Positions 1,017-63,645 of a stretch of DNA of 64,000 nucleotides are shown piece after piece. The translations under genes and the position numbers were made by a program. The notes under the pieces are model-generated. The model saw only the letters and a list, made by a program, of their open reading frames with translations. It did not search any database and was not told the origin of the DNA. Source of the stretch: Auanema rhodensis (lineage: Eukaryota; Animalia; Nematoda); NCBI GenBank assembly GCA_964057225.1, contig OZ059895.1, forward strand, positions 16,554,001 through 16,618,000, written 5' to 3'. Numbering within the stretch: the first letter of the stretch is position 1; every line of letters begins with the position of its first letter.

Positions 1017-2854
1017 ATGGAGGGTGATCTTATATATCCTCCTATTGTTATTGGGGCCATTGAAGATATTCGACATCCTCCAGAGGTAGAAATAAGACGT
1101 CAACCTGAGATAGAAGCTAGACGTGCAGTCTTTGAATTAGATCATGCACGTCGTGCGATTTTAGAACGAAACGACAGTATTGCTGGCGATATATCACAAC
1201 AGAGTGGAGCTTCCGTTAATCGTTGTAAGTTATAAATATATTGAACTCATTTAATAAATATTTTACTCTTAGCCGATTCAGCACTATTTTCATCAAAGTT
1301 TAATAACCGGCAAAGAGACCACGAATGTGTAACTCATGTTGATCCTATAATTTTACATCAAAGATGGACTGTAAGTCAAAAAAAAAGATAATCATTGGTA
1401 TATATATTTATATATATATATAACTTTAGATAGCTAATTTCAACTCTCTTATCAAACTATCAACCCCTGGAAGCTGCCTACGGAGCTCGGTTTTTAGGTT
1501 AGTGATAATGTTAATAAAGACAAAAATACTTTTTTTATCAATTGTAGAGATCCTGGTCAGCCTCAATCATGTTGGCAATTATGTATTTACCCAGGGGGAA
1601 AGCGGCAAGAAAACGCTGAAAATGTATCCCTTTTTCTTAAAATGTCATCTACAGTTCCCAATAAAGAGGTGCCTAACATTTTTCATCAAATCGTGCATGA
1701 TTTTTTATAATTACAGGTCGTAGTCAAAGCAGAGTATCGTTTCTATTTTCTTGATGATAACGAGAAACCTCGCTTTACAAATGTAAATGTTGGAGATTTT
1801 CACGCTAAACCACCTAAAGGTGGTCACAGTTGGGGTTTAAGAAATATCCCCAAACAAAAGGCTTGTCTCATAGCTTAAGCACGTGATTAATTTAATTCTT
1901 TTAGGTATTGAACAGTATCAGATCTGATAATTCATTAGTAATCTCATGTATCATTGAATTAATGCCAGATGTATCTCGCATACCTTGTAAAAGAATTAAC
2001 TCTTCATCTGGTTTAACCACCGAAATGAGCTCGGTATCAAAAGCTCATCTTATGAATGGTTTTTTATCTTTTTCTACCTTTCGTATTATTATTTTTCTTT
2101 TTACAGAATTAAGAATGTTAGAAACGGGTGAACAATCGGATATGAAAATTATAATTGGGGACGGAGGGCACATATTTCACGTACATAGGTACAAACTTAT
2201 ATCTCAATCGGATGTTTTCCGAGCTATGTTGGAGCACGAGGAACTTTATGAAAGCAAGGTATTACCTTTTCAATTTATTCTGTTCTTTATTTATTTGCTT
2301 GAAGAACGGAGAACTAACTGTAAAAGATTTTTCTGAGACTGCTGTTCGAGCTATGTTAGAATTTATTTATTGTGGTTCAGTTCATAGTGATATTAATATT
2401 GATGTGAGTATTGTTTTAATTTGACTTTTCTAATTTATTGATGTCTCAGGAATACGCGGAAACAATGGAATTAGCCGAAAAATATAACGTAACCTCTTTA
2501 AAAACATTATGTGAAGATCAACTTATATCTAAGTCTGTTTTAAAATTGAATTTGTGTTGTTATTTTCATGATTTCAGAGTAAATGTACAAACAGTTGTTG
2601 AAGCTATCGTATTAGCAGATCGTCATATGGCCCATTCTTTATTTGATCATTGTATAGAAATTGTATGTTTATTTGTTGTATATTTTTTTATAATTCTACT
2701 TTCTTTTCAGATTATGGCTCAGCGGGGTAAGGTGGTTGAAACCTCTAATTGGAAATCACTTAAAGAACATAGTCCCCGATTAGCTAACACTATTTTGGAA
2801 ACGATTGTAAACTATGATCAAGCGGTACCTCCTGTAAAAAGATCTCGGTTGTAG
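1017..2854 (+). CDS. bath-40: MATH-BTB (SPOP-like) Cul3 adaptor, multi-exon
   Basis: Spliced translation gives a MATH domain (CWQLCIYPGGKRQENAENVSLFLKMSS..KAEYRFYFLDDNEKPRFTNVNVGDFHAKPPKGGHSWGLRNIP), a BTB domain (FHVHRYKLISQSDVFRAML..VRAMLEFIYCG) and a C-terminal NLS PPVKRSRL, closely resembling C. elegans BATH-40 as I recall it. Confidence 0.9.
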
Positions 2855-12456: not shown

Positions 12457-14283
12457 ATGTATCTGGCGCAACAAGCAAATTTATTGTCATCGCAAACTCT
12501 TCCTTCCCAGGTATTTTCATCTGCCAATATGATCAAAATCATTTTATAATATAGGTAAACAGTTATAACAGCCCTTTCAATACACCTAAGAAATCTCAAT
12601 CCAATCAATCCATCATGAATTTTGGCATTACGGTAATTCTTTTTATTTGAGCTAATTTTTTAAAATAAATATTTTCAGACCTCCAATAATCTGAACGCAC
12701 TTGGGCAATTTGGACAAACTTCCTTTCCTGCTATACCTCCAGCATATTCTGAAGATTCTGGTTACAGTTCTTCCTTTTCATCAACAAAGGATTATCAACC
12801 CGATTTAAAAAACTTTTCTGTCTTCGATGCTCCTTCATTTAAAAGTTTGACTCCCTTCATGATTCTCTATTCATGAACTGATTCAGATTCTTTTTCTGGT
12901 ACTAGTTTCAATGGTGCCTCTGCTTTTGAGGGATACAATTCAAGTAATATCCTTCGTGGTAAGTTATAATTTTGTTTTCCCGCGAAATGAGATGTCTTTT
13001 AAGACTCAGCTGTACCAGTTACTCAGAGACGGCGTCATCAGGCTCTTACAGATACAAGTAGTGCTTTCACAAAATCAAATCAAGAAGTTTTTGCTCGTAA
13101 GGTTTTTGTTGGTGGTCTACCCATTGATGTAAGCGAAGGTACACTTTCTCCATTTAAACTTGTTGACAAACGACACAATTCAGAAGAAATCTGGCAAACT
13201 TTCAAAATTTTCGGTAATGTACTCGTAGATTGGCCACGTCGGCCAGATAATGGTGGACGACATGATGAACTTCCATCAAAAAGCGCTGGATGTAGGCTAT
13301 AGCTGTACATCCATCAACTTATGTTTTTAATTTTCAGCCAGATCAATGACCGGATATGTTTTCCTGGTTTTCGAGGAGGAGCTCTCTGTTAGAAAACTAG
13401 TACAACAATGTCATAAAGATGGTGACAGGTACTTGAATTCATTTAAAATTTGCTGCTCAGTTCATCTTTTCAGATATTATCTTTTTGTTTCTTCTCCTAC
13501 AATGCGATACAAGCCTGTACAAGTTAGGCCATGGAAATTAGCCGATATGGAATACATGCTTGATCCTACTATGCCGTTAGATCCCCGGAGAACTGTATTT
13601 ATTGGTGGAGTTCCTCGTCCTACCAGAGCTAGTATGTTTATTTTGATTGAACAGAACCAATCTGTATTTATTCTAGATGAACTAGCCGAATGCTTGAACA
13701 AATTATATGGTTCTGTATGCTATGTAGGCATTGATATTGATCCTGAACTCAAATATCCTAAGGGAGCTGCACGAGTAACTTTTTCTACAACTCATTCTTT
13801 CATTGCTGCAATTACGGGTCGTTTTGTACATGTTCATCATGCCGAAACTCAGAAAAGAGTCAGTTATCATCAATAAACAACTAGTATTATTCTATTCTTA
13901 AGGTTGAAATCAAACCTTATGTGATGGATGAACAAATGTGCGATGAATGCCAAGGAAAAAAGTGCCTATCTCGTTATGCTCCGTACTTCTGTGGAGATCT
14001 TGGTTGTCTTCAGGTATATCCACAGTTAGAAACATATTCTGATTCTCATCTTACTCTTTTCAGTATTTCTGTGAAACATGTTGGGATAAAATTCATCTAA
14101 ATAACGAAAAACGTGCTGATCATCGTCCATTGGTTAGAATGGGGGATCAAACAAAGGCATCCAATAGTATATAATTTGTGTTTAATTTTGTTTTTTTAGA
14201 TTCTTGCTCGGCCTCCTCATCATAACCCTCCAACAAGTAGATCGTCTTCTGGCCGGCAGTCATACTTTTCCCGCAACAATTAA
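12457..14283 (+). CDS. cpb-2: Cytoplasmic polyadenylation element-binding protein (2 RRM + ZZ finger)
   Basis: [11 protein letters not shown]; TGYVFLVF; VQVRPW; [15 protein letters not shown]; [19 protein letters not shown]; [39 protein letters not shown]. The 5' end is less certain. Confidence 0.88.
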
Positions 14284-22200: not shown

Positions 22201-23601
22201 TTAACCTAACCCAACGTCTAAACTCATCATTACGAGAAATCCAACAATACAGAGAATGGAAGCCAATTTTCCATTTCCATTTCTTTGAGCTTCAGGGATA
22301 ATATCATCCATAACAACATAAATCATGGCACCAGCAGCAAAAGCTAAAGCATATGGTAGAACTGGCTCCATAAAGATTACAGCAGCAGCTCCAAAAAGAG
22401 CGGCAATAGGTTCAACCATTCCGGATAACTGTCCATACCAGAAAGCCTGCAAAACGAACAAATGAAGTGCCACACCACGAAAACTGACTTTAAGCTTTGA
22501 GTGACCAAAGGCAGCCAACGGAAGAGAAACAGCTAATCCTTCAGGGAAATTCTGCAATCCTATTCCAAGAGCCAAGTTGAAAGCAGTTTCAAAAGTAGCT
22601 GCTTCAGTCTTTCCAACAGAACCGAAACCAACGCCCACAGCAAGACCCTGTATCAGCACAACACATACAACAGGATCCTCAATTTGAGCAAACCTCAGGA
22701 ATGTTATGCACAGTCACAGCCAAAATAAGCAAAACAATTCTACGCCATGAGGTTTTCGTTTCGTCATCAATACGGGTAACAGTTATGTCACGATCCCCTC
22801 TGTTGATTGGAACAGGATGATCTTCTCCGATTTCTCTATCTTCCGCAGGAGGCCTAGATATTTAAACATCACACACACATAATAGGTTGATAATGATTCA
22901 AAGGGTTGAAATTAAGCGAGGAAAACTAAACACACGGCAACCACCGCCCAGGACATGACAAAACAATGTGCTAGTTAAATTGACAAAAAAAACGTGCCAA
23001 AAACAACGGACAAGCTCAAAACAAAGGAAGCAAGACGAGCACGATACAGGTGTCCACGGGCGGTGGCTTACCTAATGTTAGTATTCGTTCTAAGACGAAG
23101 ATTTCCGCTTTCGGAACTATTTTCGTACCGGCGAGTATTGTCTCCCCCAACAAGAGCTAGCTCAGTTTCAGTCTTTGATGGTCCCAAACCATCCACCACA
23201 CCAGCATCGGCTAGCACGCACCTTAACATAAACATTAAATAGCCAAAAATATAAATTCCTACGTTGGTAACATGCGATCAGCATAGTGAACAAAAGCTGC
23301 TCCAAAAGCAAATCCTATACCAACCGGTATAAAGGCCCAAGCACCGTGATCTTTTTCGGCAAAATCAATGGCAGGAGCAAGAAGTGACCAAAATGAAGCT
23401 GCAGTCATGACACCTGCGGCGAAACCAAGACTACCATCTAAACAATTTAGTATTAAAATTTCATAAAACCTTTTTCTTACCTAATAATTTTTTACTCTGA
23501 TGTTTCATAACAAAAACTAAAGAAGCACCTAATGCTGTTACCCCCCATGTGAAACAGGCGGCTAATAATGCCTGATATACCGGATGAATATCCCTAATCA
23601 T
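22201..23601 (-). CDS. zipt-11: ZIP11/gufA-type zinc transporter (SLC39A11)
   Basis: [26 protein letters not shown]; [17 protein letters not shown]; [17 protein letters not shown]; [17 protein letters not shown]; GQLSGMVEP. Confidence 0.93.
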
Positions 23602-37402: not shown

Positions 37403-40034
37403 ATGAAGAAGAATGGGAGAGATAAAGACGATACTCAGCTGTTGATAAATAGGCACAGTAAGCTATTTCAGGATCAGAATTGTGATTGTGCTCTTGTTAA
37501 CCGTTTTCTAGATTCTGATGAAGATGTCGAAGCTGATGAACATATAGCGATTTCTGCTAGAAATTTCGATGCTATGCCTCATGTATTTAACTTAGCTAAT
37601 TGTATCGTAGGAGTATCTGTTTTAGCTATGCCATTCTGTTTTCAGCAGGTAAAATCTAGTGGCTAATATTGGTTAAGACCGAAAAACGTTTCAGTGCGGA
37701 ATATTACTAGCAGTTATTATGATTGCTCTTTGTTCTATACTAACTAAACTTACCTGTCATTTTCTCACAAAGGTTGCTTTCTCAGCCAGGTTCTAAAATA
37801 CTCATAAACGGAATAGATATAGAATATTTTAGAAAGCGTAGTTACGAAGCCTTGGCCTTAGCTGGACTAGGGTCAGCAGGTCGTCGATTCGTTGAAATTA
37901 GTTTACTGTTGTTTCTTGTATCATCCATTGTTGCTTTTATTGTTGTAATCGGAGATATTGGACCTCACGTTGTAGCCGAGTATTTAGAATTAGAGGCTCC
38001 TACTTCCCGATTAAGAAGCCTTGTTTTGGTCAGCAGAAATATTTTCTTCGTTAACCACTATATCCGATTTCAGATGGTCATCATTATATTTGTCGTTTTC
38101 CCGTTGTGTTGGATCAAAGATCTAGAAACATTTTCTGTTTTAAGTTCTGCTGCAGTTCTTTTCTATGCTATATTTGTTGTTAGAATGGTATTATTATTTA
38201 AAGTACATTATCGTAAATTGCAACTACTTTAGCTCGGCGAAGCTTTACCCGTTTTATATGATGGCAAATGGAGTATTAACGTTGTTTGGTGGAGACCAGA
38301 AGGTTTCTTAAAATGGTTAATTTAAATTTTTAATCTAATGCATCAAACAACATCTTTACTTTTTCAGTCTGCCTATTGTGGCTATGGCCTTATCCTGCCA
38401 AACACAACTTTTCTGTGTCATGCAATGTATTAAAGATGTAACTCCACAAAAAGTTGAATTAGTTGTTTCCAATGCCATTAATTTCTGCTCTGCTATGTAC
38501 GTTTTGTTTCAATTACCCTTACACTTTTGAGAAAACTTGAAAAAGTAAAAACAACCGGTATGTGTCATGCACGCGAGGAAAGTGAATTTGAATTTGACGT
38601 ATCGTCAAATGCGTTACGTGTTCTCATTTCAAATCAAGATCCGCTGATTTGGAAATAAAATAATTATTATGTTTTAGGTATGCAGCGGTCGGGTTGTTCG
38701 GTTATGTTGCTTTCAGTACTGAACGGTTACATGGTGATGTGCTAGTAGAACTAGGTTTGTGTAGTTTATTCAACTTCTCTATCCAACGACCATATTGTTG
38801 CAGAATCATCATTTTTAACTGAGATGTTAAAGTTGGCCTTTATGCTTTCAGTAGCTATATCTATACCTTTAATGCTTTTCCCTGCTCGTTCTGCACTTTA
38901 CAATTTACTACTACGAGATGTGAATATTATATTTTTCTTTTGCCTTGAATGTATAGTTGAATTTTAGAGCGGTTGTGATTTACCTGCCGCATTTATTGAA
39001 TCTCATACATTCCATATACTAACAGCAATTATACTGGGATCTACGTCAATGGTTGCCCTTTTCATTCCAAATGGTTTTGTTTTTCTTGGATTAAACCTTA
39101 AAGGAATATCCTAATTTCAGTTGAGTTCGTTCTTGGTTTAACTGGTTCTTTAATCGGTTCCATGGTAACTACTATAATACCTTCAATTTTATATCTCGCT
39201 TTAATCAGAAAAGGCTCAAATCTTCATTATGCCGCAAGAGTAGGCTGAAGAGTGATATAACGAATGTCATTGCTTTTGAAAATTTCAGATATGCTTGGTT
39301 ATTGGATTTTCGATTATGCTTGGAAGTACTTGGGCTACGTTAAGTGCGGATCAGCATAGTACCGTTGTTGAAAAGGTTTTTCAATCCATTAACTTCATTC
39401 ATACTCAATGAATACCACTTTTGTTATAGCCTATGCCAAAAGATTCTGTTGTTGATCAACCGGCATTGAAATCGTTGGAAAGATTAGAAGAGAAAGTTCT
39501 AGATTCAAATCTCAATATATCACATGTATGTTATTATTCATATGCTTGTCCAAACGAATATTTTTCCAGAAATTGGATGACATAGCGAATCTGGCCGCTA
39601 AGGGAGATCAGAAAGAAGCTGCAAGATTAATCGTTGAAATGAAGGAACAACAGGAGGAACAAGTGAGTTGTCATAAGGAATGTTATTCGCTTATGGTGCA
39701 TCCTTTAAGGTCAAATTGATTAAAAAGCAGGAGGAGATCGTTGAAGAGCTTAACAAGCATGTTGAAAAACATAAATTAGGTATTGAGAATTCAAAGTATA
39801 GCTGAACTATAAGTCATCTTTCAGCGAACGATGAGGTTCCGAAAGAAAAGAACGTAACAGCAGTTTTATCCGAAAATCAGGTAAAATCGCCCAATCTATC
39901 AAGAATACTCTTTTCAAAATATTTAGACAGCGGCAGAGAAGGTTCCTGTAGTAGTAGAAGAAGATGCGGCCAAGGCTGAACCGGTAGAAAATAAAAAAAT
40001 AGCAAAGTCTCATGAAGGAAGTGAAGTCAAATAA
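37403..40034 (+). CDS. SLC38A10-like amino acid transporter with charged C-terminal tail
   Basis: [70 protein letters not shown]. Start could be 37334. Confidence 0.88.
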
Positions 40035-44131: not shown

Positions 44132-45166
44132 CTACATTAGAGCGTGTTTAAAGAAGTGCAACTGACCGCCATATAACTAGCATTAGGTCAACACTTAAGT
44201 GAAATACAAAAATAATAATTTAGAACATGTTCATTATATATTAAAACTAAAAAAATACATATTGCAGTCATAGCACAGGCAAATGGAATGGAAACATAGG
44301 CGGCAGTTAGTCAGTGTTCCATATCCCCGAGTATTACGAGGGTCATTTACATAGTCGTGCGACAGAGAAACGAGAGTGGTCGCTAAGTGTAGGCAGAGAC
44401 GCAGATGTTACAAGTTATAGCAAAACCGTGTGTTGGTGTACCGAATAGGTCAACCGGGGACAGTTGGTCACATTTTCTTTTGACATGAACTGCTTGACCA
44501 AACATGAATATTAAGATATGTGTTTAGGCGCAAGTGAAAAAAGCTGAGATTGGAGGGAGAGAGGGAAACACATATATTATGTGGATAGAAGAGACAATAG
44601 AAGATTGGAGCTAGGTGACATCTCTTGATGGCTCTAAGTCGCTTATAGGAAGAGTCGGAAAATAAAGGGAAATGGGATGCTCTGAGGAGTATAAGGCAGA
44701 AGGGGAGATAGAGAAGTAGGAGGAGAAGGAGGGCAGAGCGTGATAGATAGATAGATAAAGATAGATGTAGAAAGCAAGTGATGAGAGAGAGAGAAAGGGA
44801 TGGCATCGTGTGTGAGAGAGGGAGAGAAAACGGGAAATATAATCATCTTGTTGAGTTTTTCTCATATATTTGGAAGCAAATGAGCTCACTTAAAAATTCC
44901 ATAAAGAGGAACTTGCGGAGGCTTAAATGATTCGCTAAGTTTCTCAATAATCTATTCAAATGCAACTTATTTGAAGAAAATAATCTTTTTCCGCTCTTTT
45001 CATGGATACTACTGAACACCTATCCTACAATTTTTCCAAGTTTCGTATAGCATTTCCTATTGTTGACACAGTAGTTCTAATATATACCTTTGAATGATTT
45101 AAAGAAAAATGAAAATTTGATTTTATTAAAGAACGTTTTGTGTCTTGAGTCTGTATGCCTTTTCCC

Positions 45167-45169
<3 letters not shown>

Positions 45170-45241
<72 letters not shown>

Positions 45242-45243
45242 CT
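45170..45243. repeat. (CT)n/(GA)n microsatellite
   Basis: About 26 uninterrupted CT units followed by a degenerate extension. Confidence 0.95.
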
Positions 45244-45349
45244 GTCTGTCCATAGGGTGTTGATGATGGCGAGTGAAGAAAAAAAAAGAATAAATTGCCA
45301 AGAAGTCTCGTCCATTCTTTACATCAGCAGTTGTTAGAGTATGTGTCAG

Positions 45350-46088
45350 AGTAGTATATATACGAGGGATTATAGCTGTTTTTTCAACATTTCCTCATTT
45401 CAACACATTTTCATTCTCTGAAGTCAGAGAATCACCTCATTTACAACACCTTTTTTGAAAAATAAGTGAATTTTCGAAGCACTAAAAAGTGCTTTTCTTT
45501 AATAATTTTTATACATTTTCGATCAATTTTCTGTTGAGATTTCGATTTCCTATTTTCATGTCATTTTCATACTTTTTACAAAATTGATGGATTTTCACCA
45601 AATGGTATTATAAAAATTTTTTATTTTTTATTTCTCTATTATTTGAAGAATCTAAATTTACAATTCCTACTTCTCTTGGTTGTATCCCTTGTGGTGATAA
45701 AGTGTCTCTCATAAAGATGCCACGGAAATTTTTGATTTCTAATGTGTTCACTAAAGCAAGAAGTTCAAGATTTGTAAGACTTGGTAGATCTTTCTTCAGA
45801 TCAGTCATTTATTAAGCTTAATTTTTATAATACCATTTGGTGAAAATCCATCAATTTTGTAAAAAGTATGAAAATGACATGAAAATAGGAAATCGAAATC
45901 TCAACAGAAAATTGATCGAAAATGTATAAAAATTATTAAAGAAAAGCACTTTTTAGTGCTTCGAAAATTCACTTATTTTTCAAAAAAGGTGTTGTAAATG
46001 AGGTGATTCTCTTACTTCAGAGAATGAAAATGTGTTGAAATGAGGAAATGTTGAAAAAACAGCTATAATCCCTCGTATATATACTACT
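45350..46088. mobile_element. Non-autonomous miniature Maverick/Polinton element (739 bp)
   Basis: TIRs 45350-45618 and 45820-46088 (269 bp, one mismatch); termini AGTAGT...ACTACT; 6-bp TSD TGTCAG at 45344-45349 and 46089-46094; core encodes an adenain-like protease fragment. Confidence 0.92.
45608..45808 (-). pseudogene. Truncated Maverick/adenovirus-like cysteine (capsid maturation) protease, N-terminal part
   Basis: LTNLEL..L.IKNFRGIFMRDTL..EVGIVNLDSSN matches the Polinton PRO N-terminus pattern (F.GVF.RD.LP..GIVNLD.S..GTHW) and breaks just before the catalytic His motif. Confidence 0.8.
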
Positions 46089-48500
46089 TGTCAGAGAGAT
46101 TGTTGTGAATTATGGCAGGAATTAAAAGAGAAACCCTTTCGTCTTGATATAACATTGTAAACGTCGAGGAGGAATTATTTAGTAAAAATGAGGAAAAATG
46201 TAAAAATATGATTTTTAGCCAGATAATAATCATGCGGACACTGAAAAATACTCAAAAGAGATTAGCTAGAGCGTGCATTATGACGAAAAATCAAGAAGAT
46301 GTGTGTGTATGTATGTGTGTGTGTCTGTATGTGTGTGCGGGAGGAATGAAGGGGAAGACTGAATGATAGAGAGAGAAAAGAGTGGATGATGAAGAAGAAA
46401 AGTAGGAGAAATGAGTGCGGGGAGAAGATGAGTGGGAAAGATGTCCAGATAGGTTGATAGATGTGTCAGACTTCGTTCCCCAAAGTTGGACAAGTTGAAG
46501 AGTCATCAACCAGTTTAAGCAATCAGTTATATGCAAGATTGTAGGGAGAATGATGAACATAATAAACTCAAAAAGTTGCATTTCGATAAAACCCTGGAGA
46601 AATCAAAGACATTTGCGTCAGTTCACAATATTCTGGGCATTTTGTAGATCATCAACTGAGACATAAGCTTGAATCAATTGGTCACAGAAAGAGAGAAGAA
46701 AAAAGCTTAAGCTCTTCAACATAAACGGCGTAAGTTGAGAAACGTTTGGTAATTTTGAACAGAAAAGATTGAAAAGCAAAGGAAATGGAATTCGATACGT
46801 GACATCTAAGGAGGTGTGTCGTTTACATCATGCTCTTGCTAAACATATACTAGAAATGAATGGAAAACCACCCTAGTGCACATGACGTATTGTTTTGTCC
46901 TTCTGAAGAAGTCGCGCTGCGCTTCAGACTATGCACGTTAGAGCTGCAAGACGCTGACAAAGTTGTCCTTTTCATCATGTAAAATCACATTATGTAAAAT
47001 TTAATTCTTTTTTTTTCTTTACTAAAGTTATAAACTGATTTGCAAGTTACGAGAAAAATGCTTGAAAAAAGAAAATAAAGTAAAGCAAAGAGAAGAGATG
47101 CTGTGAAATGGTGAGAGCCAACTTAAGCTTCATCAGAACCTGCTCAACGCCGACGTAAATGGCGTCTTTTTTCTTATGTGGCCGTTGTTCGGCAGCGAAG
47201 TAGCAGAGTAAGAGCAATGGCCAATCAGGATAAAGCCCATTTGAACTCGAAATCCTACGTATTTTTGGGATCAAGCCGTTATGTGGCCGCCGCGGTAGCT
47301 TTGGGACACAACTTATTTGGAGGAAATAACAAGAAAGAAGGGTTGGAGCAATAATACAAGAAGAGAAAAGAGATTGTTAGCCATTCATTTCAACTATACA
47401 TCTATCTCTCATTGCATATGGGTGTATAGACGTGTATATAGGGTGTCTATCTGTGTGTGTGTGTGTGTATGTGTATGGGTACGTCTGTCCAGAAGACACA
47501 TTGGTCCAATCCGTGTTTCTGTTAATTCATCTATTGTTGAACTCACCGAGGACAAAATGTAAAATAAAGATATTGAAAGTAAGAAATGGCATAAAGAAAT
47601 AGAAAGACGACAAGGAAGAAGACGAAGAACATAAAGAAGAAATGAGTGTTCTCTAGATATGTGAATATCTCTACTAAGTTCAACGTGTGATAGAAACGGA
47701 TTTCTTTTCGATCCTTGGAGTTTCTCATTGAGAAAGTGCAGTAATGTCGTACTAATTGGGAATTAGCCCAAGATATACTGGGAGCTGAACTCAATAACCT
47801 TGCAAATGTGACTAATCCAGCTCATGTCAGCCAATTTCTTCCGTTAAAGCTACGTCAGAAAGCATCATTATCTGAAACCAGGGTAAAAAAAAAACATGCA
47901 TAATCGAGATAAAGCTCTCTGTATAAAGCCAGATGTTTTAGATAAAATGAGCAGTAAAAAGGGCGACATGACCACAGTTAAAATCGACAAGAAATGTTTA
48001 AAACAACTTGGTTATACATTTTATTTGCTCACAGAGAATTTTGGATCCAAAAAATTACTAATTGCATGCGAATAGCGAAAGAAATTGTTATAAATTTGCA
48101 TTTTTTTCAATTTCAGCAACTATTTTGCGGCGGAAGACCGAATGTTTCTTATTTTACCCCATCTGCTACCCCTTCGTCTGCTCCTTCGTTGGAAAAAAAT
48201 ACTGGAAAACGAGTTTAGTGACAAGAGAAAGAAACAATTATGATCACATTTATTCATTTACAAATGACAATATTTCACATTTAATGCGAAAGTGAAAGCA
48301 TTTTGGCAAATGATTCGTACGGAAGAATCATGGATCATAAGGAGAATTTATGATATATATACATAGAAAACGGTGAATCATGATAGGAAATATAAATAAT
48401 AGTTTAGAAAAAACCCGTGATATACATTATAAGAGGTTGGTAAATGTAAAAGCTGAGCACTAGATAACCAGATTCGTTTCCAGAAGACTACGTCTATGCA

Positions 48501-51500
48501 CTAAACCCGGTTGGCATTATCTGACTCGTTGATGTGACATTGTGTCTGAAAAAAAAATATATTGAGAAGCAGCATTTCGTACGTGAAACGATTTATTTTC
48601 TTTCACACTGTGTTTTATCAACTTACAACTTTGTTCTTTTGATCCGTCCACATTCTTTGAGCAAAATCATGCTCATTACGGCGTTTGCAATGGTTCAACC
48701 AGCATGACTTATAAGCTTCAACTGTTCTAGGCATGGCACATTCTTCTGCAAAGAAAAAATTAATTAGAATGTATGGAAGAATAGTTGGATGGAAGAATGC
48801 AACCGATCAATGGACAAAAATATTTTAAAAATGAATGTGAACGACCGAACTGCTAAACTTGAAATTTAAAAATGAATGAGCACAACGTATGTCAATGCAC
48901 TACATGAGCTTATCGTGGGACGGTCGCACTTTTCATCAAAACAGTTAGCAAAACTAACATATAAACAATTTGCTCATAAATTAGAGACAAACCTGTTTCA
49001 ATTTTCAATCGATACTTTGTAATGCTCTTATTCTCTAAGCGACACTCATAGTTTCCGCTGTCATCTTCATTGACATCCAATAGGATGAGTCCTCCTTCAT
49101 TTGTAATTATAGCTTTTTCAGAATGTGAAACACTGTAAATTGATGATATAGTATATTAGTTCTGTTTAAAGCATTTACATCGAATCATCCTTATTCCATT
49201 GGCAGTTCAAATGTCCCTTGAAATGAACAGTATCCGAAGGATAATGTGTTAAATGAGCTGCTCGAGTAACAATCATGCAATCAGATGCACCTCTTCCAGA
49301 CCAAGATGAGATCCAACTGAAATATTCACTGATTATACATTGATATATGCGAATATGCAATGACAAGGTCATTGAGCTCAGTAAGGAAATGATATTCCTT
49401 ACCCTGCATTCTTAGAATGAACTTTCTCTCTTGGATGACATGAATCTCTGGCAGTATTCCAGCTACAATAAGGATCTACAGCACACAATGAACAAGACTC
49501 ATGCATATCACATGAAGATAAGGTGAACTGTGAAACAGCATTGTTAGTAGCTGTGAAGAAGAATTCTGAACGATAGCTTTTGTTTGGCAATTGTTATCAA
49601 AACAACGATACCTCCAGGCAAAAGAGTAGTTGCTCGGATAACACCATTAGTGTTCAAGTCACGAGTTTCGATCAAACTCCATTTCCATTGGTTTCCTTCT
49701 TTCCAATGAGATACTTTCCACATCTTTTGTTTTCTTAACATACGCATGATTATCATGTAAATGCTTCAAAGGAAAATCGTTAGTACCTTCCATCAAATGC
49801 AAAAATAACATTTTGCTCCGTTCTGACATCAACGAGAATGTGAGAGAAAACCACATCTCTAGTTGGAATGATGGGAACTTCTCCCGAAATAGGCTCAGCC
49901 ATTAGCAGATGTGATTTTGCGAAGTGCAAATCAGAATCAGAAAGTTCTTGAGAGTTGGAAACACACTAAATGATAAATTGCTATTTGATGAATCGCCAAG
50001 CATACCGTTCCGGGACGATGAGATGGAACAGCATCAGGAGGAAGTGGAAGCCAGCTAGATCCTGTGTTCTCCATAAAAGCACCGTTGTGGAATAACTGGA
50101 AAGTACAGAGTATGAAAACAATATATGAAACCCAAAATAGAATAAATATAAGCTTGTAGGGGGAAAAATACCTGATTTATAGATCTAAGAGAGAACACAC
50201 AAATGGCAGATGTTTGGAATGCAGTATCCGAAGTACTCATACCGGCGTAGAAGAGGGTGTCATCCACGGACTCCACGCGTGATACAGATTCTTCAGACAA
50301 AATTGATTACTATTATTCTTATTTCATAAGACTTACGGATGTGATCAAAGTAAAATGGATATTGAGCCGAAACTGAGCAGTTCAGTCTAGCTTTGACAAA
50401 TGAAGTCCATACTTGTCTCAAGACAATTCTACCACCCGTATCTTTCTAAAGGGTAAATGTGAAGATTTCGCCAGAATATTTAAAGAACTTACTTTACAAA
50501 TTCGAGCCACACGACTGCGAATAGCACGATCAGTAAGACCTGTCTCAACAGAAATCTCTCGGAAAAAGAAATAAACATATTCTCCAATGTCAAAGGATCC
50601 AACAAATTGAGGCTCTAGAAATAGCATGTTTCATTTAAAGATTTTGAGTTTTCATTATTTTTTTATTTTGTTTATCATATCCTGTATAGATTTCAGATTT
50701 AATCAACAATCATCCCACGAAAAATTCAAGGAGCTCTCGCACATTTTCTACAATTTTTCCGCTTCAGACAACGTTGATTCATCATTTCGGAAACCCCGAT
50801 TAGCTGTCAGCACAAAACTGGCTTGCTTGTGTTCAGATCCATGAATGGAAGTAATTTGGTGTGGCGGATGTGCTAAACTCGATTATGCTGTCCGAAGCAC
50901 AACGACAGAACCGATTGCTGGCGCACAAATGCCACCCGATAAGCACAAATTGGACATATGGGATACAGATTTTCATATTAGGCAAAGATATAGAGGAAAC
51001 ATTGGTTGAGAGATAGATATCCGTAGTCATATGGATGAATTTGACGTCAGCGTCCAAGTTGATTTGGAGTTAAAAAGAAGAAAGAAGGGACTAACGTTAT
51101 TTTGATCAAGCTAAGCTACTCAACGCATAAAAACAACACTCTAACTAACCATTAAGCCACTTGCTATCAGTATAGACTGTTCTCATGCTTGAATGGGCCT
51201 CTTTTCCCTTATTTACCAATGCAGGACGGTAAATCAAGTGATTTTCACCAGCCATACCAGTACGAATACCAGAGTAAATTGTTGAAACTTCTCCAGGATT
51301 TCCCCATTCTGAAGAGATGTATCATTGAAGTAGCTCACACGATAAACTGAATTATACCGACTAGCACAGCCGTAGAATTAACCATTGCATCAGGGGAACA
51401 AATTCCTATTTCAGTTCTGGGATCTTGCCTATCTTTCAATGTGTTAGCATCCAAAACCCGAATTTCAGGCTTCATTGCAACTGAAGAGCAGATCTGAAAA

Positions 51501-62501: not shown

Positions 62502-63115
62502 CTCTAACTACAAGCTTACTTCACTAATCACAATATCATATCACCTAAATATCGATAGCTTATATCAATTTCCCAACATCTTCATGTGCAATATAACAAT
62601 AATGTTGTGACATTTTACGCTTTTTCTATCAATAAACTTATAATTATACTAAATATGTCTGTGGAACAGCTGTTGGCGGCATTTTGCTTTTGCTTCAAAA
62701 GAACTAGTTGTATCTGGTCATCATTAAGCAACTTTCCATGTTCATCAAACCTGTCCATATCAATATAATTAGGGATATTCGAAAATGAAAGCAGTGGCTA
62801 TTGCATAATAAGATGATTATATGCCCACATTGTCCTGATATCAAATTTACAACCGGAAAGACGATTGATCAACATGGAGTTTCGACAAGATGAGTTGTTT
62901 CAGCTTCTTCTAATCAACTTTTACGAAATTCAATTCACGTTGTCCAACTGAGTCATAACAACAAGGAAATTAGCTTAGCTTGCACCCTTACTTTTCGAGA
63001 AGAATTGTACCTACACTCAGACAAACACATTGAAACATGAAGATATAAGAAATATAACATAACAGAAAACAGCTGAGATTCAGTCTTGTACAGTTTGGGA
63101 ATAAGGCAAACTTGT

Positions 63116-63188
63116 GGCCGCGTGGCGCAATGGATAACGCGTCTGCCTACGGAGCAGAAGATTGTAGGTTCGAATCCTGCCGTGGTCG
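63116..63188 (+). tRNA. tRNA-Arg(ACG)
   Basis: GGCCGCG acceptor stem; TGGCGCAATGG A box; anticodon loop CTACGGA; GGTTCGAATCC B box; TTTT terminator just downstream. Confidence 0.97.
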
Positions 63189-63645
63189 TAACTTTTGGAT
63201 TTTTTAAACTAGTTATTGTTGAAAATACAGTTTTTAGGGAAAAACACTTTTCCAGAATACAATTTTTTGTGAAAAGGAGAATAGAATTGAAAAAGCAACC
63301 GTGCAACAAAGATGTTTAGAATAAAATGACTTAAATTTAAATGATTCATCAGAATCCTATTTCTTTGGACGTTTATATACATTGCAATGACAAAAACATA
63401 ACAAATATCAAAAACATACAGCTACTTGTAACATGATCAACATTCATGCAATATTTGTTATTTTATAGGAGTGAAAACACAATTCGAAAAATTGGAGAAA
63501 AACATTTCAGTAGAAGTTTTGAAAAGCGTACCAACGATAATTTAGCGCGCCATTGCTAACTAACATAGCCCTAATTATGATAGTCGAATTTTTTTGCATA
63601 TTTTTCTTTTAATGTTTTTTTTTTAATAGAGACGTTGTTTTTCAG

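What the first reader, a model, noticed from the sequence alone, without database searches (positions are those of the whole stretch)
45344..46094. Recently inserted miniature Maverick/Polinton (a MITE-like derivative of a virus-like transposon)
Seen in sequence: a 739-bp element with 269-bp TIRs differing at one base, AGTAGT...ACTACT ends and a perfect 6-bp TSD (TGTCAG). Established: Polintons/Mavericks are roughly 15-20 kb, start with AG/AGT repeats, make 6-bp TSDs via a retroviral-like integrase, and in nematodes have been shown to carry cargo genes between species. Inference: this is an internal-deletion derivative keeping only the cis ends. It either collapsed in place or was mobilised in trans by an active autonomous Maverick, which would make it a satellite/defective-interfering element. 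Near-identical TIRs and an intact TSD suggest a recent event.
Basis: partly seen in the sequence, partly recalled or inferred. Interest (0 to 1): 0.9.

Follow-up and report, generated by a model that had tools for sequence, protein, structure and literature searches.

The report
Miniature Maverick remnant in a nematode
A 739-base insertion in a nematode chromosome is the stripped-down shell of a giant virus-like transposon (Maverick/Polinton): it keeps both ends and the first part of the viral protease gene, and it is a tidy but not unprecedented kind of relic whose mobility as a short element remains untested.

Summary
Window 45350-46088 is a 739-bp element with 269-nt inverted arms that differ at one base. 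It starts AGTAGT, ends ACTACT, and is flanked by a perfect 6-bp duplication, TGTCAG. It is the only inverted repeat of 40 nt or more in the 64-kb window.

The 201-bp core is almost filled by a 66-codon reading frame on the minus strand, whose ATG lies 11 nt inside the right arm. This frame is the beginning of an adenain-type cysteine protease, the PRO core gene of Mavericks:
- It has 58 database relatives, best E = 6e-13.
- Longer relatives pass Pfam Peptidase_C5.
- A relative's model matches adenovirus proteinases, and best of all an adintovirus adenain.

The catalytic part of the protease is missing, and so is every other Maverick gene. The Maverick origin is therefore well supported (about 0.85-0.9). 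The host is a nematode; the species is unresolved.

Still open: whether it integrated as a miniature using a helper's integrase (favoured, about 0.5) or collapsed in place (about 0.35). Copy number, the parent element and the empty site could not be tested.

It is a new member of a known kind, of moderate interest.

The parts
45344..45349 (.). Left copy of the 6-bp target-site duplication (TGTCAG)
   Evidence: chance of a 6/6 match is 4.4e-4.
45350..46088 (.). Whole miniature element, 739 bp
   Evidence: It is a single copy in the window.
45350..45618 (+). Left terminal inverted repeat (arm), 269 nt, 26.8% GC, starting AGTAGT
45820..46088 (-). Right terminal inverted repeat (arm), 269 nt, with one mismatch to the left arm. 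Its inner end lies upstream of the protease remnant.
45619..45819 (.). Core between the arms, 201 bp, 29.9% GC
45608..45808 (-). Remnant of the Maverick protease gene (PRO, adenain type), a 66-codon ORF including its stop. The gene is broken once, by a deletion that removed its 3' part with the catalytic residues. What remains has no internal stops or frameshifts. The ORF's last codons and stop are not protease-like and run into the left arm.
   Evidence: ORF. There are 58 relatives with E <= 1e-3 among 1.8 billion representatives, best 5.9e-13, nearly all matching at or near their own N-termini. Longer relatives P0043 and P0050 pass the Pfam Peptidase_C5 cut-off, and P0044 and P0010 match weakly. 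The family profile's best PDB hits are adenovirus proteinases. The model of relative P0050 matches adenovirus proteinases and an adintovirus adenain. Alignment A1 shows that the conserved blocks with the catalytic His and Cys of relatives are absent from the ORF.
45824..45829 (-). TATA-like motif inside the right arm, 21 nt upstream of the remnant's ATG. A mirrored copy lies in the left arm at 45609-45614 (+), pointing into the core from the other side.
   Evidence: Promoter function is inferred, not shown.
45413..45432 (.). Small palindrome in the left arm (9-bp stem, 2-nt loop). Its mirror at 46006-46025 carries the single arm-to-arm mismatch.
   Evidence: (D5).
45477..45494 (.). Second small palindrome in the left arm (7-bp stem, 4-nt loop), mirrored at 45944-45961
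45389..45573 (+). Three imperfect 29-nt direct subrepeats within the left arm (45389-45417, 45497-45525, 45545-45573; 66-79% alike), mirrored in the right arm
   Evidence: D1, D2, I3, I4.
46089..46094 (.). Right copy of the 6-bp target-site duplication (TGTCAG)

Best explanation
The element is a gene-less deletion derivative of a nematode Maverick/Polinton. It keeps both 269-bp termini, the short stretch between the right terminus and the protease gene, and the first part of that gene. The rest of the protease gene and all other genes (polymerase, integrase, packaging ATPase, capsid proteins, fusogen) are gone, so it cannot move or replicate by itself.

The 6-bp duplication is the footprint of a staggered cut by a retroviral-type integrase. 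I consider it most likely that the short form arose first and was then integrated here by integrase supplied by a complete Maverick in the same germ line. It could have arisen as a defective product while a complete element was being copied. That would make it non-autonomous and helper-dependent, like a MITE.

- Shown: the anatomy, the duplication, the protease homology, and the absence of other genes.
- Inferred: the integrase footprint, the order of events (deletion before insertion), and any present-day activity.
- Further inference: because both arms carry a TATA-like motif facing the core and the whole element is a near-perfect hairpin, any transcript through it would be double-stranded. 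It could feed RNA silencing against relatives. This is speculation and is not needed for the main claim.
For: Anatomy and duplication.

Protease remnant:
- The ORF is at 45608-45808.
- It has 58 relatives, best E = 5.9e-13, nearly all matching at or near their own N-termini, so the ATG is the authentic gene start.
- Peptidase_C5 scores above Pfam's curated cut-off in relatives P0043 and P0050.
- The four best PDB matches of the family profile are adenain-type proteases.
- The model of P0050 is confident (pLDDT 85, pTM 0.81). Its five best PDB matches are adenovirus proteinases, E = 5e-6 to 2e-5. Its best viral match is an adintovirus adenain, E = 3.5e-8, TM 0.71.
- No Ulp1/Peptidase_C48 family was hit.

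Contiguity of arm and gene: the ATG is 11 nt from the arm and a TATA-like motif lies 21 nt upstream.

Fit to the published definition: TIRs of 100-1,500 bp, duplications of 5-8 bp (6 in the lizard element), and PRO as a core gene (PMC10748475; PMC3014272; PMC4028283).

No other gene: the longest ORF in the whole window is 176 aa, and protease relatives hit only the core.

For 'integrated as a miniature': both arms are complete and nearly everything else is gone. That is expected if only forms with two good ends can be integrated. It would be a coincidence for a random deletion within an element of 13-25 kb.
Against: - Only one copy is in the window.
- No product more than 71% identical to the ORF is in the protein collections, so there is no positive evidence of a family.
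- An intact duplication and near-identical arms are equally expected if a full-length element inserted here and later lost its interior.
- The parent's terminal repeat is unknown, so it is not shown that 269 bp is its natural length or that PRO is its end-proximal gene.
- Non-autonomous Polintons seem rare. None was found in the lizard (PMC3014272), while in-place Polinton remnants, including repeat-only ones, are common in C. elegans (PMC11414722).
- The remnant alone gives no Pfam or PDB hit and folds poorly. Its family assignment therefore runs through its relatives.
Confidence: 0.85

Rival explanations
1. Collapse in place. A full-length Maverick integrated here and made the TGTCAG duplication. 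A later internal deletion in the chromosome then removed nearly everything between the arms. The 739-bp form has never moved.
For: An intact duplication and near-identical arms fit this as well as they fit the favoured account. There is a single copy in the window and no near-identical product elsewhere. In-place Polinton remnants of several sizes, including repeat-only ones, are documented in C. elegans (PMC11414722). About a quarter of database relatives of this protease (17 of 66) are themselves decayed before the catalytic part.
Against: A random deletion in an element of 13-25 kb would rarely spare both arms completely while removing almost all of the interior. That pattern is what selection for integrable ends produces. 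This is an argument from likelihood, not a test.
Confidence: 0.35
2. One-ended foldback. The short form was made from the right end only. Copying ran inward from the right terminus into the protease gene, then switched template and copied the terminus back out. The left arm would then be a fresh inverted copy rather than the parent's own left end, and 269 bp would be set by the switch point, not by the parent's repeat length. This is a variant of how the miniature arose, not of what it is.
For: The arms are almost identical. The core's recognisable content is right-end sequence only: the upstream stretch plus the start of PRO. A short A/T tandem (period 7, 2.6 copies) and local self-complementarity lie at the left arm-core transition. 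Protein-primed linear replicons are known to keep their terminal repeats identical by copying one end from the other (established knowledge, from memory).
Against: A few codons at the end of the ORF are neither protease-like nor arm-like, so a simple two-piece foldback does not account for every base. A/T-rich self-complementarity of this size is common by chance. The parent is unknown.
Confidence: 0.15
3. The arms belong to a cut-and-paste (DDE) family, for example Ginger2/Tdd, which also makes 6-bp duplications. On this view the protease piece is captured or coincidental, with no Maverick parent.
For: A 6-bp duplication is not unique to Mavericks (PMC2836005). Clan-CE (Ulp1-type) protease domains also occur in Ginger1 and some Mutator elements (same paper).
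Against: Ginger2 termini follow TGTNR and prefer RTATAY targets. Here the termini are AGTAG and the target is TGTCAG. The relatives match the adenain family (Peptidase_C5), adenovirus proteinases and an adintovirus adenain, not Ulp1/Peptidase_C48. The gene's own start lies 11 nt from the arm, with a TATA-like motif inside the arm, as expected for a native end-proximal gene and not for captured cargo.
Confidence: 0.03
4. Assembly artefact: an inverted duplication created by chimeric or foldback reads.
For: Long, near-perfect palindromes are a known product of some library and assembly errors (general knowledge). Reads cannot be inspected here.
Against: The element lies in the middle of a contig between unique flanks, with a clean 6-bp duplication exactly at its symmetric ends. 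It also has one arm-to-arm difference and a non-palindromic 201-bp core holding a recognisable gene start. Artefacts do not produce target-site duplications.
Confidence: 0.02

Closest known systems
Autonomous nematode Mavericks/Polintons (e.g. the Polinton-1_CB family of Caenorhabditis; PMC10748475, PMC11414722, bioRxiv 10.1101/2022.07.12.499685)
   Same: Long terminal inverted repeats, a 6-bp target duplication, an adenain-type PRO gene, and a nematode host.
   Different: This element is 739 bp against 13-25 kb. It has no polymerase, integrase, ATPase, capsid or fusogen genes, and its PRO is cut down to its start. Its arm is 269 bp, not the 744-bp repeat reported for C. elegans. No DNA comparison with any full-length element was made.
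Catalogued non-autonomous Polintons (e.g. Polinton-1N1_DR of zebrafish, named in PMC9341505)
   Same: A Polinton derivative that cannot encode its own machinery.
   Different: Only the name is available in the papers held. Its size, structure and copy number could not be compared. No such element from nematodes turned up in the literature searched.
Repeat-only and partial Polinton remnants at the C. elegans eri-6/7 locus (PMC11414722)
   Same: Polinton terminal repeats persisting without the coding interior in a nematode chromosome.
   Different: Those are products of rearrangement in place, some as direct repeats, without a symmetric element bounded by a duplication. Here the two arms, core and duplication form one clean insertion unit.
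MITEs derived from cut-and-paste transposons by internal deletion (e.g. Stowaway-like families born from a Tc1/mariner element, PMC3814204)
   Same: Small size, both ends kept, interior lost, and dependence on a helper's enzyme.
   Different: The parent here is a self-synthesising, virus-like element using an integrase, not a cut-and-paste transposase. The arms are far longer than typical MITE repeats. The multicopy status that defines MITE families is not shown.
Adenain (adenovirus proteinase, Pfam Peptidase_C5) and adintovirus adenain
   Same: Relatives of the ORF belong to this family by sequence and fold.
   Different: The window keeps only the first helix and two strands' worth of the domain and lacks the catalytic residues. 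It is not a protease.

Membership tests
Maverick/Polinton (element level) | Terminal inverted repeats of about 100-1,500 bp (PMC10748475) | tested here: met
   269-nt arms, 268/269 complementary.
Maverick/Polinton (element level) | Target-site duplication of 5-8 bp, typically 6 (PMC10748475; PMC3014272) | tested here: met
   TGTCAG on both sides; chance 4.4e-4.
Maverick/Polinton (element level) | Encodes protein-primed polymerase B and a retroviral-type integrase ('by definition', PMC5499653) | tested here: not met
   The core holds only a 66-codon ORF, and the longest ORF in the window is 176 aa. It is therefore a derivative, not an autonomous member.
Maverick/Polinton (element level) | Carries the adenain-type protease gene PRO (core gene; PMC4028283, PMC10748475) | tested here: met
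   Only the start of the gene is present. Homology. Fold of a relative.
Maverick/Polinton (element level) | Length 13-25 kb | tested here: not met
   739 bp.
Maverick/Polinton (element level) | Canonical AG at the 5' terminus (criterion recalled from memory; Kapitonov and Jurka 2006 is not held) | tested here: inconclusive
   The element does start AG and end CT, but the criterion could not be verified in any held paper.
Maverick/Polinton (element level) | The same terminal repeat found on a full-length element in the same genome (parent) | not tested
The host genome is not available in the tools.
MITE-like non-autonomous family | Small, with inverted ends and a duplication, and no coding capacity for its own movement | tested here: met
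MITE-like non-autonomous family | Many copies sharing the same internal junctions, at different sites with different duplications | not testable with these tools
   One copy in the window. The exact ORF is not on record, but neither are host ORFs of this window, so that null is uninformative. No relative is above 71% identity.
Adenain-type cysteine protease (Peptidase_C5, clan CE) | Sequence membership | tested here: inconclusive
   The ORF itself gives no Pfam hit. Its relatives P0043 and P0050 pass the curated cut-off, and the family profile hits adenovirus proteinases at E = 5e-3 to 9e-3.
Adenain-type cysteine protease (Peptidase_C5, clan CE) | Adenain fold | tested here: inconclusive
   The remnant alone has pLDDT 64 and only one helix, so no fold search was run on it. 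The model of relative P0050 is confident and matches adenains.
Adenain-type cysteine protease (Peptidase_C5, clan CE) | Catalytic His and Cys present | tested here: not met
   The conserved blocks that carry them in relatives are absent from the ORF.
Ginger2/Tdd cut-and-paste transposons | Termini TGTNR; 6-bp AT-rich target RTATAY (PMC2836005) | tested here: not met
   Termini AGTAG...CTACT; target TGTCAG (criterion).
Satellite / defective-interfering element of a live Maverick | Depends on, and interferes with, a co-resident autonomous element | not testable with these tools
   No parent was identified, and no expression or population data are available.

The most novel reading that the evidence does not exclude
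The element belongs to a currently mobilised family of miniature Mavericks that ride on a live autonomous Maverick in this nematode. That would show that about 270 bp of each end is all the integrase, and possibly the replication and packaging machinery, needs. Its hairpin or convergent transcripts might also feed RNA silencing against the parent's ends and protease gene, making it an interfering satellite.
Probability: 0.1. Interest if true: 0.8.

Novelty: new member of a known kind. Interest (0 to 1): 0.5.

Why it matters
How Mavericks/Polintons move is still inferred almost entirely from sequence. The excision step in particular is unknown (PMC2836005).

A clean, recent, gene-less derivative bounded by a duplication marks out the DNA that can suffice for integration: at most about 270 bp per end. 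If further copies exist, simple counting and presence/absence comparison across strains could show whether such elements are carried along by complete ones.

Surveys of nematode Polintons select for elements with at least five proteins (PMC10748475), so miniatures like this one are systematically overlooked.

If it is a single collapsed copy, it is an ordinary relic, useful only as a dated marker of past Maverick activity at this locus.

Tried and rejected
**Searches that gave nothing**
1. Direct Pfam and PDB searches with the 66-aa ORF gave nothing significant, and PHROGs gave only a weak hit (E = 0.061). The link to adenain runs through relatives.
2. The exact-identity look-up of the 66-aa ORF found no record. 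I judged this look-up allowable because the ORF's junction-specific tail can only occur in copies of this gene-less miniature. Two host ORFs from the same window are also absent. The window's genome is therefore not in that index and the null says nothing about copy number.
3. The founding papers and reviews (PMC1450207, PMC2167627, PMC5898198) are not held. The 'AG terminus' rule rests on memory.
4. Host species: the CPEB exon search shows a nematode, but the length filter excludes full-length orthologues. I ran no further search on it.

**Leads that failed**
5. P0062 (185 aa) looked like a full-length version of the closest hit, but it is similar only at its start.
6. The apparent extension of three protein alignments into the left arm would have meant a shared junction. 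It amounts to only 3-4 identities in 12-13 columns, so I rejected it.
7. P0004 and the ORF resemble each other a little further than either resembles a longer protease. The extra stretch is short and low-complexity, so this is unresolved.
8. The truncation pattern recurs: 17 of 66 relatives also lose similarity before the catalytic part. Their continuations are unrelated to one another, so these are independent decay events, not one family junction.
9. The fold of the remnant alone had low confidence, so I ran no fold search on it.

- It never entered a tool call, a note or this report.
- (b) In my reasoning, in the printed output, and in notebook entries 3-4, I recorded where the similarity of the window's ORF and of 17 relatives to longer proteases ends. 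That comes close to listing places of breaks.
Full report
**What is there**

Window 45350-46088 is a 739-bp unit built from two 269-nt inverted arms (45350-45618 and 45820-46088) around a 201-bp core. The arms differ at a single position, arm position 76. The unit begins AGTAGT and ends ACTACT, and the hexamer TGTCAG flanks it on both sides (45344-45349 and 46089-46094).

None of this is chance:
- The pair is the only inverted repeat of 40 nt or more anywhere in the 64-kb window.
- The terminal 29-mer occurs only at the two ends, against zero expected.
- A 6/6 flank match at fixed positions has probability 4.4e-4 for this base composition.
- The flanks share two more bases by accident, but only the 6-bp reading leaves the ends symmetric.

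A 66-codon ORF on the minus strand almost fills the core (45608-45808). Its ATG lies 11 nt inside the inner edge of the right arm, and a TATA-like motif lies 21 nt upstream of the ATG, within the arm.

On its own the ORF gives nothing significant in Pfam or the PDB. A HMMER search of 1.84 billion representative proteins with no length restriction found 58 relatives at E <= 1e-3, the best at 5.9e-13 and 71-79% identity. Nearly all of them match at or near their own N-termini, which makes the ATG the authentic start of a gene.

The family can be named from several results:
- The longer relatives P0043 and P0050 pass Pfam's curated threshold for Peptidase_C5, the adenovirus endoprotease. Two others match it weakly.
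- A profile of the family alignment has adenovirus proteinases and the ASFV S273R protease as its four best PDB hits.
- A confident model of P0050 (pLDDT 85, pTM 0.81) has adenovirus proteinases as its five best PDB matches, E = 5e-6 to 2e-5.
- The same model's best match in the viral structure library is the adenain of an adintovirus, the animal Polinton-type viruses (E = 3.5e-8, TM 0.71).
- No Ulp1-type family was hit.

The ORF is therefore the beginning of PRO, one of the core Maverick/Polinton genes (PMC4028283; PMC10748475).

**State of the genes**

PRO is broken once, by a deletion that removed its 3' part. The conserved blocks that carry the catalytic His and Cys in relatives are absent (alignment A1). 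What remains has no internal stop or frameshift. Its last few codons and its stop are not protease-like and run into the left arm.

All other Maverick genes are absent altogether. The longest ORF in the whole window is 176 aa, and the 60-odd protease relatives hit nothing in the window outside the core. The remnant alone folds poorly (pLDDT 64, one helix), as expected for a piece cut from a domain, so I ran no fold search on it.

**Host and setting**

The window is nematode DNA. Its exons match BTB/BACK, CPEB-type RRM, ZIP and amino-acid-transporter families. The CPEB exon's best hits are all nematodes: Cooperia 66%, Angiostrongylus and Loa 63%, and Ancylostoma 71-74% over part of the exon. 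The species is not resolved, because the length filter excludes full-length orthologues. G+C is about 34%. It is not human DNA.

The element lies about 2.8 kb from the nearest recognisable exons, which belong to a minus-strand semaphorin gene (Sema and PSI domains at 49.4-50.3 kb). A (CT)39 microsatellite ends about 100 bp to its left. I found no evidence that it interrupts a coding exon.

**What it is**

The combination points to a deletion derivative of a Maverick:
- long inverted ends in the published range (100-1,500 bp);
- a 6-bp duplication (published range 5-8 bp, 6 in the lizard element);
- a native-looking junction between the right end and the start of PRO.

The most concrete rival family with 6-bp duplications, Ginger2/Tdd, has TGTNR termini and RTATAY targets (PMC2836005). 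Neither is met here. By the strict definition (polymerase plus integrase, PMC5499653) the element is not a Polinton but a non-autonomous derivative of one. I put the Maverick origin at 0.85-0.9.

**How it got here**

Two accounts fit the window equally on hard evidence.

In the first, the short form existed before it was integrated here by a helper's integrase. It could have arisen as a defective product while a complete element was being copied. I favour this account at about 0.5. Both arms are complete while nearly everything else is gone, and that is what a requirement for two good ends would select. It would be a coincidence for a random chromosomal deletion inside an element of 13-25 kb. 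A sub-variant, at about 0.15, is a one-ended foldback in which the left arm was copied from the right.

In the second, a full-length element inserted here and collapsed in place (about 0.35). Remnants formed in place, including repeat-only ones, are common in C. elegans (PMC11414722). About a quarter of this protease's database relatives (17 of 66) are themselves decayed. Non-autonomous Polintons appear rare (PMC3014272).

The intact duplication and the near-identical arms do not discriminate between the two accounts.

**Age**

There is one difference in 269 nt (0.37%; Poisson 95% interval 0.009-2.1%). If the arms were identical at integration and mutate at 2-3e-9 per site per generation (a rate taken from memory for Caenorhabditis), that corresponds to roughly 0.7-0.9 million generations. 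A single event allows anything from very recent to several-fold older, and exchange between the arms could reset the clock. 'Recent' is fair; a number is not.

**Possible activity (inference only)**

The strand folds into one near-perfect 269-bp hairpin (-458.7 kcal/mol, z = -47). The TATA-like motif is mirrored in the left arm, facing the core. Any transcript would therefore be, or become, double-stranded. In nematodes, double-stranded RNA made from transposon inverted repeats is a known trigger of transposon silencing (reviewed in PMC3878927; original work recalled from memory). No expression data were available.

**Copy number and parent: not tested**

- The window holds one copy.
- The exact ORF is not on record, but host ORFs from the same window are not either, so that index does not contain this genome.
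- No product above 71% identity exists in the two protein collections.
- One lead remains. P0004 is an 83-aa product on a single unnamed 1,093-bp ENA contig. It is 65% identical to the ORF, and the two resemble each other slightly further than either resembles a longer protease. The extra stretch is short and K/N-rich, so this is not significant by itself.

I could not tell whether DNA of a nematode Maverick, or a fragment of one, counts. I therefore made no pattern scan of public collections with the arm or its junctions. I also made no related-loci search with the protease alignment and no contig look-up for any relative. The only look-ups made were of the window's own ORFs. The first of those could only have returned copies of this gene-less miniature.

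- (b) In my reasoning, in the printed output, and in notebook entries 3-4, I recorded where the similarity of the window's ORF and of 17 relatives to longer proteases ends. That comes close to listing places of breaks.

**Novelty and score**

Non-autonomous Polintons are catalogued at least by name (Polinton-1N1_DR, PMC9341505), and Polinton remnants in nematodes are described. I found no description of a MITE-sized, duplication-bounded Maverick derivative in a nematode in the literature I could search. The nematode surveys filter for five or more proteins, which would hide such elements.

I rate it a new member of a known kind, with interest 0.5. It is a clean and instructive specimen, made firmer by the protease remnant. 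It would become important only if it proves to be one of a family carried along by a live Maverick.

Noticed in passing
Proteins P0016 (Apolygus lucorum KAF6198118.1, 986 aa) and P0038 (ENA, 489 aa); not in the window: Two distant relatives of the ORF are predicted proteins made of head-to-tail repeats of just the protease N-terminal module. P0016 has about 12 units of about 51 aa in a higher-order period of about 234 aa, and P0038 has 7 partial units. This looks like satellite-like tandem amplification of the start of a Maverick protease gene in other animals, read through by a gene caller.
   Followed up: partly
Protein P0052 (166 aa; not in the window): One relative carries a Pfam Phospholip_A2_4 domain (PF08398, E = 4e-11) at residues 37-86, upstream of the protease-like stretch that the ORF matches (residues 98-144). 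This may be an unexpected domain combination or a gene-call fusion.
   Followed up: no
Relatives P0001-P0069 (not in the window): Most database records of this protease family are fragments: 44 of 64 are 110 aa or shorter. Seventeen of 66 lose similarity before the catalytic part yet continue with mutually unrelated sequence. Decayed copies dominate public data.
   Followed up: partly
window 45170-45247: A (CT)39 microsatellite, 92% pure, ends about 100 bp to the left of the insertion site. Degenerate GA/CT-rich tracts lie on both sides, at 44698-44774 and 46339-46402.
   Followed up: no
window 46300-46337: An imperfect (TG)n / 16-bp repeat lies about 200 bp to the right of the element.
   Followed up: no
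window 48913-50300 (-): Exons of a semaphorin gene on the minus strand: PSI at 49402-49590 and Sema at 50058-50300. A possible Ig-like exon at 48913-49080 has no Pfam hit. This is the nearest recognisable gene to the element.
   Followed up: partly
window 63115-63189 (+): tRNA-Arg (anticodon ACG), found by ARAGORN and Rfam.
   Followed up: no
window 1908-2854 (+), 13346-13876 (+), 22201-22659 (-), 37774-38232 (+): Host exons: BTB and BACK (SPOP-like), CPEB-type RRMs, the C-terminal part of a ZIP zinc transporter, and an amino-acid transporter. The best hits to the CPEB exon are all nematodes.
   Followed up: partly
window 45616-45633: A short perfect A/T tandem (ATTTTTT, 2.6 copies) straddles the transition from the left arm to the core. 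It could have helped a template switch or slippage when the short form arose, or it could be chance in A/T-rich DNA.
   Followed up: no
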